From Oikopleura dioica (lineage: Eukaryota > Animalia > Chordata): a stretch of 64,000 nt of DNA. The position numbers and the translations under genes were made by a program. The first letter of the stretch is position 1. Every line of letters starts with the position of its first letter. This document shows positions 14,948 through 21,907 of this stretch, in pieces. The stretch covers positions 5,394,001 to 5,458,000 of the forward strand of contig OU015566.1 of the NCBI GenBank assembly GCA_907165135.1. Reading direction: 5' to 3'. The notes beneath the pieces are model-generated. The model worked only from the letters and a program-made list of their open reading frames with translations. It had not been told where the DNA came from and did no database searches.

Positions 14948-15303
14948 GCAGGTGGATTTCCAGTCTTCGAAATCGAGAAAACTCTGAGCATTTCATTCTG
15001 CAATTCCATTTATATTGTCGCAACAACTGTTCATAAAAAATTTTCAATTTATATAAAACCCGGAAACAAGTTACAAAAAGGGAAAGTTGAGTCTCCCTTT
15101 ACCGGCGAAATTGACAACTATCGCCCAAATTTGTATAAATCTGTAAAACTTGATATGCCATTAAATTTGACTTTGTGTGTTCCCACACTCCTATTCTAGG
15201 ACTAATCCTAGGAAAAAAACAAACTTTCGGCCAAATGAAACGAAGTTATTTTGAAATTCGACAAAGAAATATGAGGACAAATTTATTTTCTAGCTCATTT
15301 TAT

Positions 15304-16823
15304 TTATGAATAATATGACCAGTAACCAACATTAAAGACCAAAAACAGTACAGGAATCCAGAGTCTGAATTTTTCATCCAACCACTCTGCATCCGGAACA
15401 GGCGGAAGCTCATCGTAGCGAAACTCAGGAAGCTCAGTTTTCTTCCTCGGGGGTTCTTCGCCGATAATTTCAAATAACCAGTCGTCTGGGTCTTCCTTAA
15501 TTTTTTCGATGAAAAAAAATTTGAAAGATATTTTTCAACCTGAGATTCTTCTTCTTGAATAAGCGCGTCATATTTTTTCCTGGCAATTTCGATTTGTTGC
15601 TCGCGAAATTTATGATCTCGGATGTACACATTCACTTTTGCGTATTCCACCAAACAAATAAACGTCAATATCTAGGGCACATTAATCACGGTATTCCTCC
15701 TTGATTTCAAACCTGGCAGGCAAAGAACCAAACATCAATCGCTTTGATATAAGAAACTTTGGGAAGTGACCCTGAAGTAGCTACTGTATTTACGCCTAAA
15801 TTAGCGAAAACACCGATGCAAATTCGAGCAGGGGAATTTCTCGGGTCAATCCAGTAGCTCATGTAGCTGAGAACAACGCCGAGTAGAGTGGGGATGAAAA
15901 TATTGATGATGTAATAGCCGAGTTGACGAGTGACGACAAATTTTGCTTCGATGCAGCTTTTGTGGTTTCGGAATGCTCCGTTTTCTATAGTTATATCAAT
16001 CTAAAGTTTAGATTTTAAACCAGTCCTGAAAGTCCCACTTTCGTAGTTCTTGTCACATTGCCCAAGTAAAATCCCTTTAGGATCAAAAGAAAAGTCCTTC
16101 ACAAGAGTTATTTTCAGTTTCCCAAAGAAATAACTCTTCAACAAACCCTGAGACCTTCCGAAAGAACAATTTCATTGAATTGAAAAGGCCCGCCTTCTTT
16201 TTTCTCGTCCCACTCAAAGTCGATTTCGCGGTTGGTGACGCTAAAACATTCCAGTTGCATGTAAATTTCTTGCGTATCCATCTAAGTGAGTTTTTGAAAG
16301 AAAGAAAAATAATTTTTTTTCGAAAATTTTTCAAAAACTTTCCGGAAATTTTGTCAGCGACATAGGGCTGGAGAGAACGAGCGTGATCCTCATACTGTAA
16401 ACAACCTCTCCTTCTCGACTTATTCGCACGAGCTTATTTTTGAGAGTTATATCATGGAAGCGAGAGGACTTTTCGTTGTTGAAAAACAAGTCTGGAACCC
16501 AAATTTTGTCCAAATATGTTGCATCTGGCGCTATTGGATCTCCCCTCACATTGTGCCCTAGAACACGGTAGATGTTACGTAATCTTATGAAAAAACTTAC
16601 GAAGTCGTGGGTCAGTCCATCTCTGTCTCAAGAACATATTTATCCGGTAATCCATCGTTTTCGCAGAAATTGAGCCGAAAGAATTGACAAAAATATTAAC
16701 GGCAACTTTGACAGGTTTATTCGTACCATAACCTGGCCGGACTCTCTTATCATAATTCACCAAAAGCTTATCGATAACGGAGGCCGAGAAGCAAGAAAAA
16801 AGATAAAATAAAAGCGCTCTCAT
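15304..16823 (-). CDS. Pentameric ligand-gated anion channel subunit, glycine receptor-like, lacking Cys-loop cysteines
   Basis: [36 protein letters not shown], loop [14 protein letters not shown]2 [23 protein letters not shown]4 [13 protein letters not shown]. Confidence 0.92.
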
Positions 16824-17310
16824 AGTTTCACTGCATACTTCTGAGGAGAATTGCTGCGAATGAGAAATTAATTGGATAATGATTTTTCTATGTCCGCTCA
16901 AATTAATTAGGACCGGTGGTATTGATCCAAAGTGCATAACTATTCTTTCAAGACGGTCACCTTTCCAAAAAAAAAATTAAATTCTGACAATTGAGGAATC
17001 AACAACATTAATGGGGTCAAAACTACCAGCTGCACCGAAAATGACCGTTTTCAATAAGAACCTACTGTAATCTATAATATTGTGATGAAATTTATTTATA
17101 CGGAATTTTTATCAATGTTCAACTGAAAAAGTCGACTCAGATTATTTTTACGAAATTTATTACAGATCTAATCAATATGGAGGAATCACGTGATGAGCCA
17201 AGAATCTTGGCAAGAAGAGCGGCTGTAGCTAAAACATTCATAAGGATCTGACGAGATTTTTTTATCTTGAAAATAAATACTACATGTTACATGTATTTCT
17301 CACTTACTAT

Positions 17311-20300
17311 TTATTCCGGACTGAGAGTAATTGAGTATGCGTGAGGCAGTAGATACCATCTTTCAGTTTGCATGTTGAAATTTTCATTGACTAAAGCTAA
17401 GAACTCGTTGTTGTCTCCGTAATAAACAAAATCTTTGTAGGAGTTAAAGCAATCTTCCATCATTTTGTAAGAAACGTAGAATTCTTTGGAAAGAGGAATT
17501 CTGATTTGCGAGCCGGAATGGTCGAGAAGAGTGGTTTGAAGAATGAATTCGGAGTTTTCGACACGGTCGAGCACCATTTGGTGAAAAAATATGGATCCAT
17601 CGGGATTCAAATAAGCGCCGGTTACAGTCAGGGGACGGGAGAATGTGAAGTTTCCATGAAGGAGGACTTGATAAAAAAACTTAGTAGAAATGTAAAGTAT
17701 CTTTTTATACCTTGCTCAAAGTGGAAGTGTCCTTTCAATTCATCCCGCGGCAAGGCCTTTCTGATGATATCCCATCCACTTACAGTCAAATAGGTTTTGA
17801 ATTCTATTCTTCTAAGAAGTAATTCAATCTCGTTTGTTTGAAAATCTTGTTCTTCTTTTTGCGGATTGAGATTGAGTCCAGCCATACTTCGCGGATAAAC
17901 GACCATTACCAGAATTGTTAATATTTTTTCCAAGGTAAAGAACCTTTCCATTATCTCATCATCAGAGTTCAAGTCGTTTTTTATAGCCCATCTAAGGAGA
18001 ACAGTGACTGAGATAGGAACAGAAAGGTCGCTTTCTTTTTGGTCTAAAACATTCATCATCACATTGTTAAAATCGATATCGATTTGTCTTGTCATTTTTT
18101 GTTTAATATTGGCCATCGCAATTGACTTCGTTAAGTTCGGATCGTCAAGGCTAAAATAAGAAGACGCATTTTTTAAAGATATTATTCGTGACAGCTTTTG
18201 GATATCTTCCTCTGCTGGTGTTTCATTTGAGAGCCATTCTGCATAGCAATCCTAAGAAAAATCTTAAGATTTGAAATATGAATCAATAGAAACCCGAAGC
18301 TCATCTTTGATTTTCTCCTCCTCATCTGGCTTGATTGGATCAAACAGAAGACTCCATGCAGTCTTCCAATCACAGAGAATGAAAACATGCAGCCTCGATT
18401 GAAATCCTCCATTAAATCCACAAAGTTGCCAGTTGCTCGAAAATCCTGCTGACCCAGCGTCTAGAATTGTATCTAGAAAATTTAATTCTAGTGTCATATC
18501 TTACAAAGATGATAAGAGTCCCTGTACTTGCTCCCTCTCCTAGTGTATCCTGTTTCGCGATAACTTTTTCTTCCTGTTCTTTCTTCAACGATACCGAAGT
18601 CAATCAGTTTTGCTTCCCCGTTTTTAAGCAGAACATTTTCGGGTTTCAGATCGTAATGTGTGATGCCAATTTTTCTCAAATACTTTTCTCCTTCCATGAC
18701 TCCAAGTGCTATCTTTTTTCTTTCTTCAAGACTCAAATCTTCTTTTTTGAGCCTGCTTCTTAGATCCGAGTCGCATTTATCCATAATTGTTATCCATCCA
18801 ATACAATCTTCCTGGTGAATATCGCCGGGAAGAAACATTTCGATGTTGCAAATATTTCTTATAACATTCGGATGGAGCGGAATAACATTTTTGGCATTCT
18901 TGTAGTCATTCTCTGCAGGTTTATAGTCTTCAAAATATGGTCAAACTTGGCAAAACTTGTCTCGAAAAATAAAAAATTCGCGACCAAAGAATCAAAGTTT
19001 TACCGTTCAGATCATTGATGTTCGTTGTGAAATTACGATCGACTCCCGTAAAAAGAGCGGAATCAAAAGGTTGTACTCGAATGGCAGTCTCAATTCCATC
19101 AAAATTCGCTTCGAGAACAATTGCTTCTCCACCAACTGAAATGACTTTGGGTTTTAGAAATTCATCAAGAATCCATTCTCCTGTTTCTTCTTTAAGCTCG
19201 TCACGTCTAAGTCGACGACCAGAAAGAGGGGATTCTCTTCCAATATTTTTTCTGAAATTGGGTAAGCTCAAATTTCTCCAAGCTCTTCATATCTTTGTCA
19301 AAGAGCTCTCCATATATCTTTTGATATCCAATGACACCTCTTTCTCTAAATATGACAGATTCCCAGTTGGCAGCATTTTCAGGGTCATTGAAATTCAAGC
19401 GTTCAATGGAGAGTATCAATCTGTCTAAATCATCACGCGAACTCGTTCTCTTCAATTTTGCAACAATTGATTCAAGCGATATCTTCACGTCTACTGGGAA
19501 AACAAGCGCACCAGGGTTCGTATCTCGATCTGTGTCGAGGACTGTTGATGAATTGGGATTGTCTTTGTTTTCTGCTTTTGACAAAGTAATTGAATAAGCA
19601 TAAGGATAGAGATACCATTGATCGGCGATCATGTTCCGCTCTCCATTTATTAACTGGAGTTTTTCCATTTTTGGACCGGTAAAATTAAAGGTTGATTCAT
19701 TTCCTCCTTTATAAATGTCATAATAAGGATTCTTGAGATTGATTCGTATCTGAGAAGGATTTTTGTCGGTAAACTGAGTATTTTGAAGAACGTATTTCCT
19801 TTCGCCTTTCTTTTCTTCCACTTTATCCAAAGTCATTTGGTGATAACAGATATCTCCTTGTGAATTTTTACATAAGCCAATTACTGTTAGAGGTCGGCCA
19901 AACTGGAAATTATTATGAAGAAGCACTGATCAATGATTATTAAAAAAAAAAAGTTTCTTTACCTTCATGCCAGTTCAAGATGCTTTTCCCAATTTTACCA
20001 AGCCTCGCAAGTATTTCCCAGCCACTTTTGTGTAAGTATGTTTCGAGTCTTAGCCTCTCCAAAATCTTGTCGATTTTTGTGTGTTGATAGTATTGTTCTT
20101 CTTTATCGGGGTTATAATTCAGTCCTGCTAAACTTCGAGGATATATTATCATTATCAGACATATAAAAATTCTCTCGACTGTGAAATTTTTCATCTCTTC
20201 ATCATTTACTTTCAAATCGTTTTTGATGGCCCATTTAAGGAGAACACTCACGGAAATAGGGACGCAGAGATTGCTGTCTTTTTGGTTGAGAACATTTTTG

Positions 20301-21907
20301 GTCAGGTTTTCGAAGATTTCGTTCATTTGCTTTGTCAATCTGTGTTTAAGACATGCAAGCGATAGAGATTTCGTTAGATTTTCATCATCAAAGCAGTCGT
20401 GAGTAGACGCATCCGATAACAAAATAGTTTTTGATAGATTTCGAATTTGATGAGAATGAGGAGTCGCATTAGAAAGCCATTCGGCGTTGCATGTCTAAAT
20501 GATTAGTAACAGTTGACGTCAAAATGAAGAATACAGAGTTCATGAATCTACCTTCAAAATCGTTTTAACATGCTTTCTTTTAGTCGGTTCAATTGGATTG
20601 AAAACAAGGCTCCAGGCAGTCTTCCAATCGCTCAAAATCAGAATGAAAAGTTTACTTCTTTCAATTTCGTAGCCCAAGTTGTTTAATCCTAGTTGTATAG
20701 CTCCAGTAAAACCTGCTGACCCGGCATCTAAGAAGACAGCTCAGACAATAGTTTATGAAAAGAATACTCACAAAGATATTTCCAGTTAATGAACTTGCTG
20801 CCTCTTCTTACATAACCCATTTGACGATAGCTTTCTCTTTTTGTTGATTCTTCGACAATGCCATAGTCTATCCATTTTGGTTTCCCATTTTTAAAAAGAA
20901 TATTTTCTGGTTTCTGGTCGAAGTGAAATAGTCCAATCTGTCCTAAATATTCTTCTCCTTCCTTGACACCGATGGCAATTTTTTTCCTTTCTTCCAGGCT
21001 CAAATCTCCTCTCTTTAGTGTTTCTCTCAAATTCGAATCGCACAGCTCCATAATCGTTACCCATCCAATACAGTCAGAAAGGTCTACAATCGAAAATATC
21101 TCGATATTTGCAAAGTTTTTGATGACATTTTCGTGAACAGGAATTACTTTGCTTTCATCGATGTTGTCGTTGTCGGCGATGTAAAAATCTAGACTCAAAT
21201 TTACTTATTCTGTTTTATCTTTCGATGGAAGTAGGGCAGTAACGATCGGTCCTTGTACTACCGGTTTTTTTAGTAAAAAAAGGCGTTCGAATCGAACGTT
21301 CGCGCGGGCTTTTATCACAGAGATTAATACAGTTACCTTTCGAAAGGTGAGTTTTAAAGCTGAGATTTTCCCATTGTTCAAAAAATAAAATTGGATCAAA
21401 AACGTGAACTCGAACTGCAACTTCGAGATCATTTATTTTTGCTTTGAGAACAATTGCTTCTCCTCCAACAGAAATAAATTCTTCTTCCGATTTTTCTCTC
21501 TCCTCGTTGTCTCGCATCTCCCACATTCCCTTTTCCTCTTCTGTCAACATCGAACGCTCAATACGTATTTTGGATGATCTTTCAGGCAATGACTTTTGAT
21601 AAGACTGAAGTAATTCTGTCTGGAGTGGAGTTGCTTTGAATTTTGATCCAGCAATTTCTTCTTCTTTGTCGTCTCTGTCTTTTATAATTCTATAAATTTC
21701 ACCAAAAAATTCTCCATTGATTTCTTTATAAACAACGTGTTTCCATCCAGCATCATCCTCATCATCAAAATCCATTCTCTCAATAGACAAAATCAGTCTA
21801 TCTAAGTCATTTCTACTCGTCTCTCTCTTCAATGTCTTCATAAATGGCTCCAGCCATGTCTCTATACTGTCTCTCGTCAACTCTTCTGGATGTGACGAGA
21901 CTTCCAT
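17311..21907 (-). CDS. Tandem two-unit fusion: [helical domain - protein kinase-like - papain-like protease] x2, second protease inactive
   Basis: Kinase motifs SVGGEAIV, VAVR/TAIR, HFDQKPEN/HYDLKPEN and IDYG/IDFG in each unit. Protease motifs NQKDSNLC..HQM..VLQN (unit 1) versus DQKESDLS..HQM..ILQT (unit 2). ORF 19207-19926 joins unit 1 to unit 2 without a stop. Confidence 0.75.

What the first reader, a model, noticed from the sequence alone, without database searches (positions are those of the whole stretch)
17311..21907. Tandem kinase + papain-like protease fusion with an active/dead protease pair
Seen: two homologous units joined in one frame. ORF 19207-19926 runs from the unit 1 protease into LKRTSSRDDLDRLILSIER, a copy of the N-terminal LKRETSRNDLDRLILSIER. 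Each unit has a kinase-like domain followed by a domain with papain (clan CA) spacing. Unit 1 has Q-x5-C (NQKDSNLC, Cys ~20265), His (~19841) and KYVLQN. Unit 2 has Cys>Ser (~18022) and Asn>Thr. Established: Q19/C25/H159/N175 is the papain catalytic set, and active/pseudo-enzyme pairs are common in immune and cell-death switches. Inference: an undescribed kinase-gated protease, possibly a self-cleaving sensor/effector module.
Basis: partly seen in the sequence, partly recalled or inferred. Interest (0 to 1): 0.82.

Follow-up and report, generated by a model that had tools for sequence, protein, structure and literature searches.

The report
Two-unit kinase plus papain-fold protease gene
This is an intact gene of the planktonic tunicate Oikopleura dioica that joins two copies of an unstudied "kinase-like domain plus papain-type cysteine protease" unit in one protein. 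It belongs to a family of over a hundred genes, and the second protease copy has lost its catalytic cysteine; what the family does is untested.

Summary
On the minus strand, 21907-17311, lies a 9-exon gene with eight GT-AG introns. It has two homologous units, each an N-terminal region, an ePK-fold kinase-like domain and a C-terminal Gln/Cys/His/Asn domain.

In the assembly the shared frame stops at 19209-19207. Illumina contigs of two samples each add one base at two homopolymers (after 19245 and 19227). This gives one uninterrupted ORF of 1372 codons, and the restored residues match the family consensus.

An AlphaFold model of a paralog's C-terminal domain matches only clan CA cysteine peptidases (Z up to 9.6). 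No Pfam or PDB sequence match exists for this domain.

The family has at least 99-133 copies in this genome. It is annotated only as "unnamed protein product [Oikopleura dioica]", and this scan had already found it on other DNA of this genome (s1-342394, s1-534393).

New here: only three loci are two-unit fusions. Each pairs one canonical protease domain with one altered one (S, S or Gln>Glu), against 3 altered among 93 other copies.

"Kinase-gated" and "self-cleaving" are untested, and no locus-specific RNA was found.

The parts
17311..21907 (-). Whole gene: 9 exons and 8 GT-AG introns of 32-148 nt. Exons: 21907-21337, 21188-20772, 20727-20552, 20494-19963, 19925-19004, 18927-18505, 18472-18294, 18251-17711, 17666-17311 (stop included). 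The ORF is 1372 codons once the two read-supported bases are allowed.
   Evidence: frames, splice sites, no internal stop; reads.
21338..21907 (-). Unit 1 exon 1: start ATG, N-terminal region with TSRNDLDRLILSIER (from 21820), glycine-rich loop GGEAIV and beta3 strand VAVRV (from 21466), where Arg replaces the usual Lys.
   Evidence: the family alignment A1 has this Arg invariant.
20772..21188 (-). Unit 1 kinase core exon: catalytic loop HFDQKPEN and DYG (from 20925).
   Evidence: Pfam Pkinase 3.5e-10, 40.1 bits; motif scan.
19963..20494 (-). Unit 1 protease exon A: conserved linker motif FDDENLTKS, then NQKDSNLCVPISV with Gln and Cys (Cys codon 20266-20264), then YPRS and GW motifs.
   Evidence: The paralog model puts this Cys at the first residue of helix 65-81.
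19570..19925 (-). Unit 1 protease exon B part: YHQMTLD (His 19842-19840), KYVLQN (Asn 19782-19780), end motif WYLYPYAYSITLS.
19444..19578 (-). Linker inside exon 5 that stands where single-unit genes have a stop codon, intergenic DNA and a start codon. It has no stop and no Met, and it continues in frame into unit 2's N-terminal region.
   Evidence: Chance of 44 stop-free codons at this composition is about 0.04. The same read-through is seen at L013 and L014.
19227..19246 (-). Two assembly errors: one base is missing after 19245 (A-run on the - strand) and one after 19227 (C-run). They create the false TAG at 19209-19207.
   Evidence: table 4: both insertions are in the single spanning contig of X1 (depth 135.9) and of X2 (depth 30.9). 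The three frames read QFQKK / ILEENP / PLSGRR in turn.
19004..19443 (-). Unit 2 N-terminal region (SSRDDLDRLILSIER from 19443), GGEAIV and TAIRV (from 19133).
18505..18927 (-). Unit 2 kinase core exon: HYDLKPEN and DFG (from 18658).
   Evidence: Pfam Pkinase 3e-14, 53.5 bits.
17711..18251 (-). Unit 2 protease exon A: LDDPNLTKS, then DQKESDLSVPISV with Ser (TCT, 18023-18021) where the family has Cys.
17311..17666 (-). Unit 2 protease exon B: FHQMVLD (His 17583-17581), FILQTT (Thr 17535-17533 in place of Asn), WYLLPHAYSITLSPE, and stop TAA 17313-17311 lying inside an AATAAA (17315-17310).

Best explanation
SHOWN: this is one gene of Oikopleura dioica that encodes a protein of about 1372 residues. 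The protein is made of two tandem copies of the unit that defines a large family seen only in this lineage. Each unit has an N-terminal helical region, an ePK-fold kinase-like domain, a conserved but probably flexible linker (FCLDDPNLTKS-like) and a very divergent papain-fold (clan CA) cysteine-peptidase domain. The kinase-like domain keeps HxD-K-N and D[FY]G, but Arg replaces the beta3 Lys throughout the family. The peptidase set Gln/Cys/His/Asn is almost invariant across the family.

INFERRED ORIGIN: the two-unit gene arose from two tandem paralogs. The upstream stop, the short spacer and the downstream start became an in-frame linker.

INFERRED FUNCTION: family members are intracellular cysteine peptidases, or related thiol hydrolases. 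Their protease domain is coupled in cis to a nucleotide-binding or phosphotransfer module that positions or regulates it. In the two-unit proteins only one protease domain stays catalytically canonical (here unit 1). The other (here unit 2, Cys>Ser plus Asn>Thr) has become a weakened or non-catalytic partner. That partner may be on the way to decay through redundancy, or it may be kept as a binding or regulatory module.
For: Gene structure and single ORF: with the read-supported bases and the consensus match.

Kinase: Pfam Pkinase above cut-off for both units. The paralog model (pTM 0.81) matches many ePKs at Foldseek E about 5e-6. DAPK is the best PDB sequence match.

Protease fold: model pLDDT is above 90 over most of residues 65-287. 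All 50 best VIA matches are clan CA Cys peptidases: xylellain Z 9.6 over 158 aligned residues, Der f 1 9.5, PCAT1 C39 9.2, cathepsin B 9.1. Atlas matches are C1/C39 clusters. Cys is the first residue of a helix, Gln lies 6 residues upstream, His is in a strand and Asn follows 16 residues later.

Constraint on the catalytic set: Q 77/79, C 76/78, H 30/30, N 25/29 in database members; Q/C in 93 of 99 copies in this genome.

Family size and range: at least 133 exon matches in the genome. All named homologs are O. dioica. Only 64 representatives were found among 1.84 billion proteins. Divergent members lie on Tara Oceans contigs.

Fusion is recurrent and paired. Only three loci are fused, with these states: window Q/C + Q/S, L014 Q/C + Q/S, L013 E/C + Q/C. 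That is 3 altered of 6 fused units against 3 of 93 others, Fisher p = 0.0024.
Against: No transcript evidence for this locus. Two oligo-dT RNA runs gave only partial 90-95% reads that belong to a P0077/78-like paralog, and 14 RNA-labelled contig sets held none of its words. These runs may be from another O. dioica lineage.

The structure was modelled on a paralog (P0080, about 45-50% identical), not on the window protein. I could not measure the Cys-His-Asn geometry.

No enzymatic activity is known for any member. Arg at beta3 is a classic kinase-inactivating change, so 'kinase' may be wrong in function.

The three fusions may not be independent events: both Ser codons are TCT and the tree is unresolved. 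The p-value is therefore optimistic.

Which unit is altered differs between loci. That fits plain relaxation of a redundant domain as well as a designed enzyme/pseudoenzyme pair.
Confidence: 0.6

Rival explanations
1. Redundancy decay only. The fusion is a recent read-through accident. One of two redundant protease domains is drifting (C>S, N>T, or Q>E) with no function as a pair, so the 'active/dead' pattern is a by-product and not a mechanism.
For: The altered unit is the second one in two loci and the first in the third. Upstream units have long branches: 1.14, 0.5 and 1.5 or more, against 0.36-0.44 for downstream units. Fusions are rare, 3 loci among about 100-130 units.
Against: Both units keep full-length open frames, all splice sites and nearly all other conserved motifs over 1372 codons. 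The linkers stay stop-free and in frame at three loci. Unit 2, with its two catalytic changes, is otherwise the more conserved unit.
Confidence: 0.3
2. The papain-fold domain is not a protease. It could be another clan-CA-type thiol enzyme, such as a deubiquitinase or Ubl protease, an amidase, or a transglutaminase- or acyltransferase-like enzyme.
For: The matches are to the fold only: Z 9.6 at best, 8-17% identity, Foldseek E only 0.03, and no Pfam or PDB sequence hit. UfSP, ZUFSP and Atg4 are also matched at Z 6-7. The protein has no signal peptide or prodomain of the C1 type.
Against: The best and most numerous matches are C1 and C39 endopeptidases. The Gln-x5-Cys ... His-x16-Asn pattern is that of papain.
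Confidence: 0.2
3. Two separate genes, or a gene plus a pseudogene. The stop at 19209-19207 is real, and unit 2 is silent or is expressed separately, for example after trans-splicing.
For: The assembly as given has the stop. O. dioica uses operons and trans-splicing (my own knowledge). An in-frame Met (DKDMKSLEKF) lies before the unit 2 kinase domain.
Against: Contigs of two DNA runs agree on two extra bases that remove the stop, and the restored residues match the family consensus. Unit 1 then has no stop codon of its own. The only AATAAA next to a stop is at the end of unit 2.
Confidence: 0.08

Closest known systems
Papain family and relatives (MEROPS clan CA: C1 papain/cathepsins/xylellain; C39 bacteriocin-processing peptidases of PCAT transporters)
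   Same: Same fold in the model, with Z 9.0-9.6 and 124-158 aligned residues. The nucleophile sits at the N-terminus of the central helix, Gln lies 6 residues before it, and His is followed by Asn after 16 residues (20 in window unit 1), as in papain's Q19/C25/H159/N175 (papain numbering from my own knowledge).
   Different: No detectable sequence similarity: no Pfam Peptidase_C1 or C39 hit and no PDB hit. There is no signal peptide or C1-type prodomain. The domain is fused behind a kinase-like domain in a cytosolic-looking protein and is restricted to appendicularian-like sequences.
The same kinase plus papain-fold family found earlier by this scan in this genome (notes s1-342394, s1-534393)
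   Same: Same family, same genome, same domain order, and the same conclusion that it is undescribed and has over 100 copies. My own searches agree.
   Different: Those loci are single-unit genes. This one is a two-unit fusion with a Cys>Ser/Asn>Thr second protease domain, and its apparent stop is an assembly error.
Plasmodium SERA proteins (papain-fold, with Ser-type and Cys-type paralogs)
   Same: A papain-fold domain in which some paralogs carry Ser at the nucleophile position. SERA5 is among the structural matches, at Z 8.1 and 7.4.
   Different: SERAs are secreted parasite proteins without a kinase domain. No sequence relationship was seen. The comparison of the Ser variants rests on my own knowledge.
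Tandem kinase / kinase-fusion proteins and other enzyme-pseudoenzyme pairs of immune signalling (own knowledge, not tested here)
   Same: Duplicated catalytic modules are fused in one chain and one copy is degenerate. They belong to large, fast-evolving, lineage-specific families.
   Different: Here the degenerate module is the protease domain, not the kinase. Both kinase-like domains carry the same motifs. No link to immunity has been shown.

Membership tests
Eukaryotic protein kinase superfamily (Pfam PF00069 Pkinase) | Profile match above the curated cut-off | tested here: met
   Unit 1 scores 40.1 bits and unit 2 53.5 bits against a cut-off of 31.7. Only profile positions of about 74-160 of 263 are matched.
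Eukaryotic protein kinase superfamily (Pfam PF00069 Pkinase) | Bilobal kinase fold | tested here: met
   The model of paralog P0080:1-420 has pTM 0.81 and gives at least 500 Foldseek matches to kinases at E <= 0.001. It is not modelled on the window protein itself.
Eukaryotic protein kinase superfamily (Pfam PF00069 Pkinase) | Catalytic loop HxD-x-K-xx-N and DFG | tested here: met
   Unit 1 has HFDQKPEN...DYG and unit 2 has HYDLKPEN...DFG. Of database members matching an HxD...K..N...DxG pattern, 37 have DFG and 1 DYG; that pattern required HxD/K/N, so it does not test their conservation.
Eukaryotic protein kinase superfamily (Pfam PF00069 Pkinase) | Beta3 (VAIK) lysine | tested here: not met
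   The motif is AVRV in unit 1 and AIRV in unit 2. This Arg is invariant in alignment A1 (R154) and is found in 11 of 11 motif matches. The domain is therefore an atypical kinase or a pseudokinase.
Clan CA (papain-like) cysteine peptidases | Papain-like fold | tested here: met
   All top 50 of 48,161 chains are clan CA peptidases, with Z up to 9.6. Atlas matches are C1/C39 clusters at TM about 0.4. Foldseek alone was weak, at E 0.03. The model is of paralog P0080:411-697, with the window exons as alignment rows.
Clan CA (papain-like) cysteine peptidases | Nucleophile Cys at the N-terminus of a helix, with an oxyanion Gln upstream | tested here: met
   Cys65 is the first residue of helix 65-81, and Gln59 lies upstream. 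Window unit 1 has Q and C; unit 2 has Q and S.
Clan CA (papain-like) cysteine peptidases | His and Asn/Asp placed next to the Cys in 3D | tested here: inconclusive
   His198 lies in strand 195-206, and Asn214 follows strand 209-213, 16 residues later. Both are conserved (H 30/30, N 25/29).
Peptidase family C1 (Pfam PF00112) or C39 (PF03412) | Sequence-profile match to the family | tested here: not met
   No Pfam hit for the domain in the window exons or in five paralogs. No PDB hit by phmmer or by the family profile. It is a separate, unclassified family within the fold.
Pseudoenzyme (unit 2 protease domain) | Loss of catalytic residues | tested here: met
   Cys>Ser (TCT, one step from TGT) and Asn>Thr. 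Ser occurs in 4 of 99 copies in this genome and in 2 of 78 database members.
Pseudoenzyme (unit 2 protease domain) | Loss of activity | not testable with these tools
   This needs an enzyme assay. Natural Ser-type papain-fold proteins exist, so Ser alone does not prove inactivity.

The most novel reading that the evidence does not exclude
The two-unit genes are a selected enzyme/pseudoenzyme design. An active papain-fold protease is held in one chain with a decoy or regulatory copy, within a gene family of over 100 members that diversifies fast and serves as an intracellular sensor/effector (immune-like or conflict) system. This would be in a tunicate that lacks much of the usual chordate immune gene set. 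The conserved disordered FCLDDPNLTKS-type linker would serve as an autoprocessing or pseudosubstrate site under control of the kinase-like domain.
Probability: 0.1. Interest if true: 0.85.

Novelty: new variant of a known kind. Interest (0 to 1): 0.6.

Why it matters
A compact 64-Mb animal genome holds more than a hundred copies of a protein design that I could not find described. The design joins an atypical kinase-like domain to a papain-fold protease whose catalytic residues are under clear constraint. This suggests an unexplored signalling or defence protease system in the sister group of vertebrates. The present locus adds a natural experiment. In all three loci where two units are fused, one protease domain stays canonical and the other is altered. 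That gives a direct handle for biochemistry (Cys against Ser domains in one protein). It also offers a test of whether enzyme/pseudoenzyme pairing evolves predictably after domain duplication. There is a practical lesson too: the reference assembly has homopolymer errors that break real genes, so apparent stops in this genome need checking against reads.

Tried and rejected
- Sequence searches of the Cys domain against PDB (single sequence and family profile) found nothing useful. The only row was an unrelated acyl-homoserine-lactone synthase at E 0.089.
- The protein-atlas feature search gave only scores below 0.9.
- Complex prediction with the kinase region against the protease region of paralog P0080 returned 'no answer' (score 0.00). 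This is neither support nor evidence against contact.
- RNA evidence: the two oligo-dT raw-read runs gave only partly fitting reads on the conserved stretch 18776-18811. Their loose ends translate to ELFHKKDLKK and ADEDLRTVLK, which is a P0077/78-like paralog. This shows that the family is transcribed, but not this locus.
- A word-based search with a 795-aa member, meant to find annotated two-unit proteins (length window up to 1391 aa), returned only single-unit proteins of another subfamily. It says nothing about this subfamily.
- Trees of single exons and of three concatenated exons could not decide whether the three fusions share one origin.
- The HMM score comparison of the units is biased for the window because its exons are in the profile. 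I used it only for L013 and L014.
- Three literature searches found no paper on the family.
- I first suspected a nematode and a single A6>A5 error. The genome identity and the reads corrected both.
- An early guess that the upstream neighbour is a sulfotransferase got no Pfam support.
Full report
WHAT THE DNA IS

The window is G000:C4:5394001-5458000 of a 64.3-Mb, 19-contig genome. Earlier notes of this scan call the organism Oikopleura dioica. Every named homolog of the gene is 'unnamed protein product [Oikopleura dioica]', which agrees. The region has about 37% G+C and very short introns.

OBSERVATION

The six-frame view of 21950-17250 on the minus strand shows two sets of homologous coding blocks in the same order.

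- Each set starts with an N-terminal region holding [ST]SR[ND]DLDRLILSIER.
- Next comes a glycine-rich loop GGEAIV followed by A[VI]RV.
- Next comes a kinase core: HFDQKPEN...DYG in unit 1 and HYDLKPEN...DFG in unit 2.
- Next comes an AGSAGF...DWKTAWSL block.
- Next comes a linker with DD[EP]NLTKS.
- Last comes a domain with Q-x5-[CS]VPISV, YPRS, GW, [YF]HQM.LD, [VI]LQ[NT]T and W-Y-L-x-P-x-A-Y-S-I-T-L.

Unit 1 has Cys at 20266-20264, His at 19842-19840 and Asn at 19782-19780. Unit 2 has Ser at 18023-18021, His at 17583-17581 and Thr at 17535-17533.

All eight introns are GT-AG and 32-148 nt long. I joined the exons only inside scripts, to check phases and stops.

ONE FRAME OR TWO?

In the assembly, exon 5 reads from the unit 1 protease through a 44-codon linker with no stop and no Met, into unit 2's N-terminal region. 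It then ends at a TAG (19209-19207), and unit 2 goes on in another frame.

I laid the contigs of two DNA runs on the stretch. X1 is probably the source sample; X2 is another sample of the same study. In each run the single spanning contig carries one extra base after 19245 (A6 becomes A7 on the coding strand) and one after 19227 (C4 becomes C5) (tables 4 and 8).

Around these runs the three frames read, in turn, QFQKK, ILEENP and PLSGRR. Together they match the family consensus FQKKILRxNPSL. With an unknown letter placed at each of the two sites, the gene has 1372 codons and no internal stop. The stop is therefore an assembly homopolymer error, and the two units are one ORF.

The only AATAAA beside a stop codon overlaps the unit 2 stop.

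WHAT THE DOMAINS ARE

Kinase-like domain:
- Both units pass Pfam's Pkinase cut-off.
- A model of paralog P0080:1-420 was built on 33 family rows that included the window exons. It has pTM 0.81 and matches hundreds of protein kinases, with PERK, Stk1, NIK, GCN2 and DAPK at E about 5e-6.
- DAPK is the best PDB match by sequence.
- The catalytic loop and DFG are kept, but the beta3 lysine is Arg in both units and in every family member aligned.

C-terminal domain:
- It has no Pfam, PDB or atlas sequence match.
- A model of P0080:411-697 was built from alignment A2 (35 rows, window exons included). Its pLDDT is above 90 over most of residues 65-287.
- An exhaustive structural comparison with 48,161 chains gave clan CA cysteine peptidases in all 50 top rows: xylellain Z 9.6 (158 aligned residues), Der f 1 9.5, Der p 1 9.4, PCAT1 9.2, cathepsin B 9.1, then staphopain, streptopain, UfSP, Atg4 and ZUFSP.
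- Foldseek alone was weak, at E 0.03, though its hits were also C39 and staphopain.
- The ESM-atlas shape search gave C1 and C39 clusters at TM about 0.4.
- In the model the Cys is the first residue of the long helix 65-81 and Gln lies six residues before it. His198 is in strand 195-206 and Asn214 follows the next strand, 16 residues after His, which is the papain spacing.
- I could not read the model's coordinates, so the triad geometry was not measured.

THE FAMILY

- The Cys exon has at least 133 matches in this genome. Many lie in clusters on C1 (16.1-16.6 Mb) and C2 (11.6-12.7 Mb).
- A HMMER scan of 1.84 billion representative proteins found only 64 relatives.
- Full-length database members are single units of about 690-720 aa.
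- Two divergent members lie on Tara Oceans metagenome contigs.
- The catalytic set is strongly conserved. In database members it is Gln 77/79, Cys 76/78, His 30/30 and Asn 25/29. In this genome 93 of 99 copies have Q/C.
- This constraint argues that the domain is a working thiol enzyme in most members.
- This scan had already met the family on other DNA of this genome (s1-342394, s1-534393). My results agree with those notes.

WHAT IS SPECIAL ABOUT THIS LOCUS

Searching the genome with the exon that spans the junction shows that almost all units end 0-15 codons after AYSITL. Only three places read through into a second unit: the window, C1:16.576-16.580 Mb (L013) and C5:15.523-15.528 Mb (L014). 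In each, a linker of about 25-50 codons replaces the stop, the spacer and the start.

The catalytic states of the three fused genes are as follows.

| Locus | First unit | Second unit |
|---|---|---|
| Window | Q/C/H/N | Q/S/H/T |
| L014 | Q/C/H/N | Q/S/H/N |
| L013 | E/C/H/N | Q/C/H/N |

Every fused gene thus has exactly one canonical and one altered protease domain. That is 3 altered of 6 fused units, against 3 of 93 other copies; two of those three are near-identical copies and one is a fragment. Fisher's exact test gives p = 0.0024.

The test assumes independence, which is not shown. Both Ser codons are TCT, and the trees do not resolve whether the fusions share an origin.

In those trees the upstream units have long branches (1.14, 0.5 and over 1.5). 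The downstream units (0.36-0.44) nest among ordinary single-unit genes. The window's unit 2 is the more conserved unit overall, yet it carries the two catalytic changes.

HOW IT PROBABLY WORKS

Shown: the architecture, the folds, the conservation and the fusion.

Inferred:
- Family members are intracellular cysteine peptidases, or related thiol hydrolases, coupled in cis to an atypical nucleotide-binding or kinase module.
- The strongly conserved but low-confidence stretch FCLDDPNLTKS between the two domains is a candidate linear motif, either a processing site or a pseudosubstrate.
- In two-unit proteins one protease domain does the chemistry. The other is either decaying because it is redundant or is kept as a non-catalytic partner.

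Nothing here tests gating by the kinase, self-cleavage or a sensor role. The complex prediction of the kinase region against the protease region gave no verdict.

EXPRESSION

No run on record as RNA holds the locus. Two oligo-dT raw-read runs gave only partly fitting reads of 90-95% identity on 18776-18811. Their flanks translate to ELFHKKDLKK and ADEDLRTVLK, which is the P0077/78-like paralog. So the family is transcribed, but expression of this gene is open. The runs may also come from another O. dioica lineage.

VERDICT

The papain-like reading is supported at the level of fold and motifs. The 'active/altered pair' is real in sequence and recurs in all three fused genes. The mechanistic part of the interpretation remains conjecture.

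The family is undescribed as far as three literature searches reach, but it is not new to this scan. I rate it a new variant of a known kind: known folds in a new architecture, forming a new clan-CA family. Interest is 0.6.

Noticed in passing
window 19227-19246: The reference assembly lacks one base in each of two homopolymer runs, relative to Illumina contigs of two samples. This creates a false stop in a real gene, and other apparent frameshifts in this genome may be of the same kind.
   Followed up: yes
L054 (G000:C4:3230988-3231491) and L071 (G000:C4:3285804-3286268): Two identical-looking copies of a divergent subfamily carry Ser at the nucleophile position (AQRERFLSVPFSV). They sit in very long open frames (669 and 574 aa), which suggests genes with few or no introns and a recent 55-kb-spaced duplication.
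   Followed up: partly
P0077, P0078, P0080 residues 1-25 (model m4df6d6693c89 helix 2-25): One subfamily starts with a hydrophobic helix (MLEFSILAILATCIAGM...) that looks like a signal anchor. The window's subfamily instead starts with the hydrophilic MEVSSHPEELT. The subfamilies may differ in location.
   Followed up: no
window 20395-20365 and 18152-18122 (FDDENLTKS / LDDPNLTKS); A1 columns around F406-S416: A nearly invariant motif (FCLDDPNLTKS) lies in a stretch modelled with pLDDT below 50 between the kinase and protease domains. Such conservation without predicted structure suggests a linear motif, such as a cleavage site, a docking site or a phosphosite.
   Followed up: no
window 18776-18811 (reads of runs X8, X9): PolyA-selected RNA reads from a paralog (P0077/78-like) map partly here, showing that at least that member of the family is transcribed.
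   Followed up: partly
window 15300-16937, minus strand: The downstream neighbour is a Cys-loop ligand-gated ion channel gene (Neur_chan_LBD, E 4e-15 and 1.7e-13).
   Followed up: partly
P0104 (568 aa): One database protein of the family also carries a fucosyltransferase Pfam hit (PF00852). This may be a merged gene model or another fusion.
   Followed up: no
L017, L018 (Tara Oceans metagenome contigs): Divergent family members (23-29% identity in the protease domain) are encoded as uninterrupted ORFs of 321-449 aa on short marine metagenome contigs. They presumably come from other appendicularians, so the family is wider than the sequenced O. dioica strains.
   Followed up: partly
L095 (G000:C1:16150698-16150892): A short family fragment has Trp at the nucleophile position and diverges right after it (NQKESDLWAQVNI). 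It is probably a broken copy in the C1 cluster.
   Followed up: no
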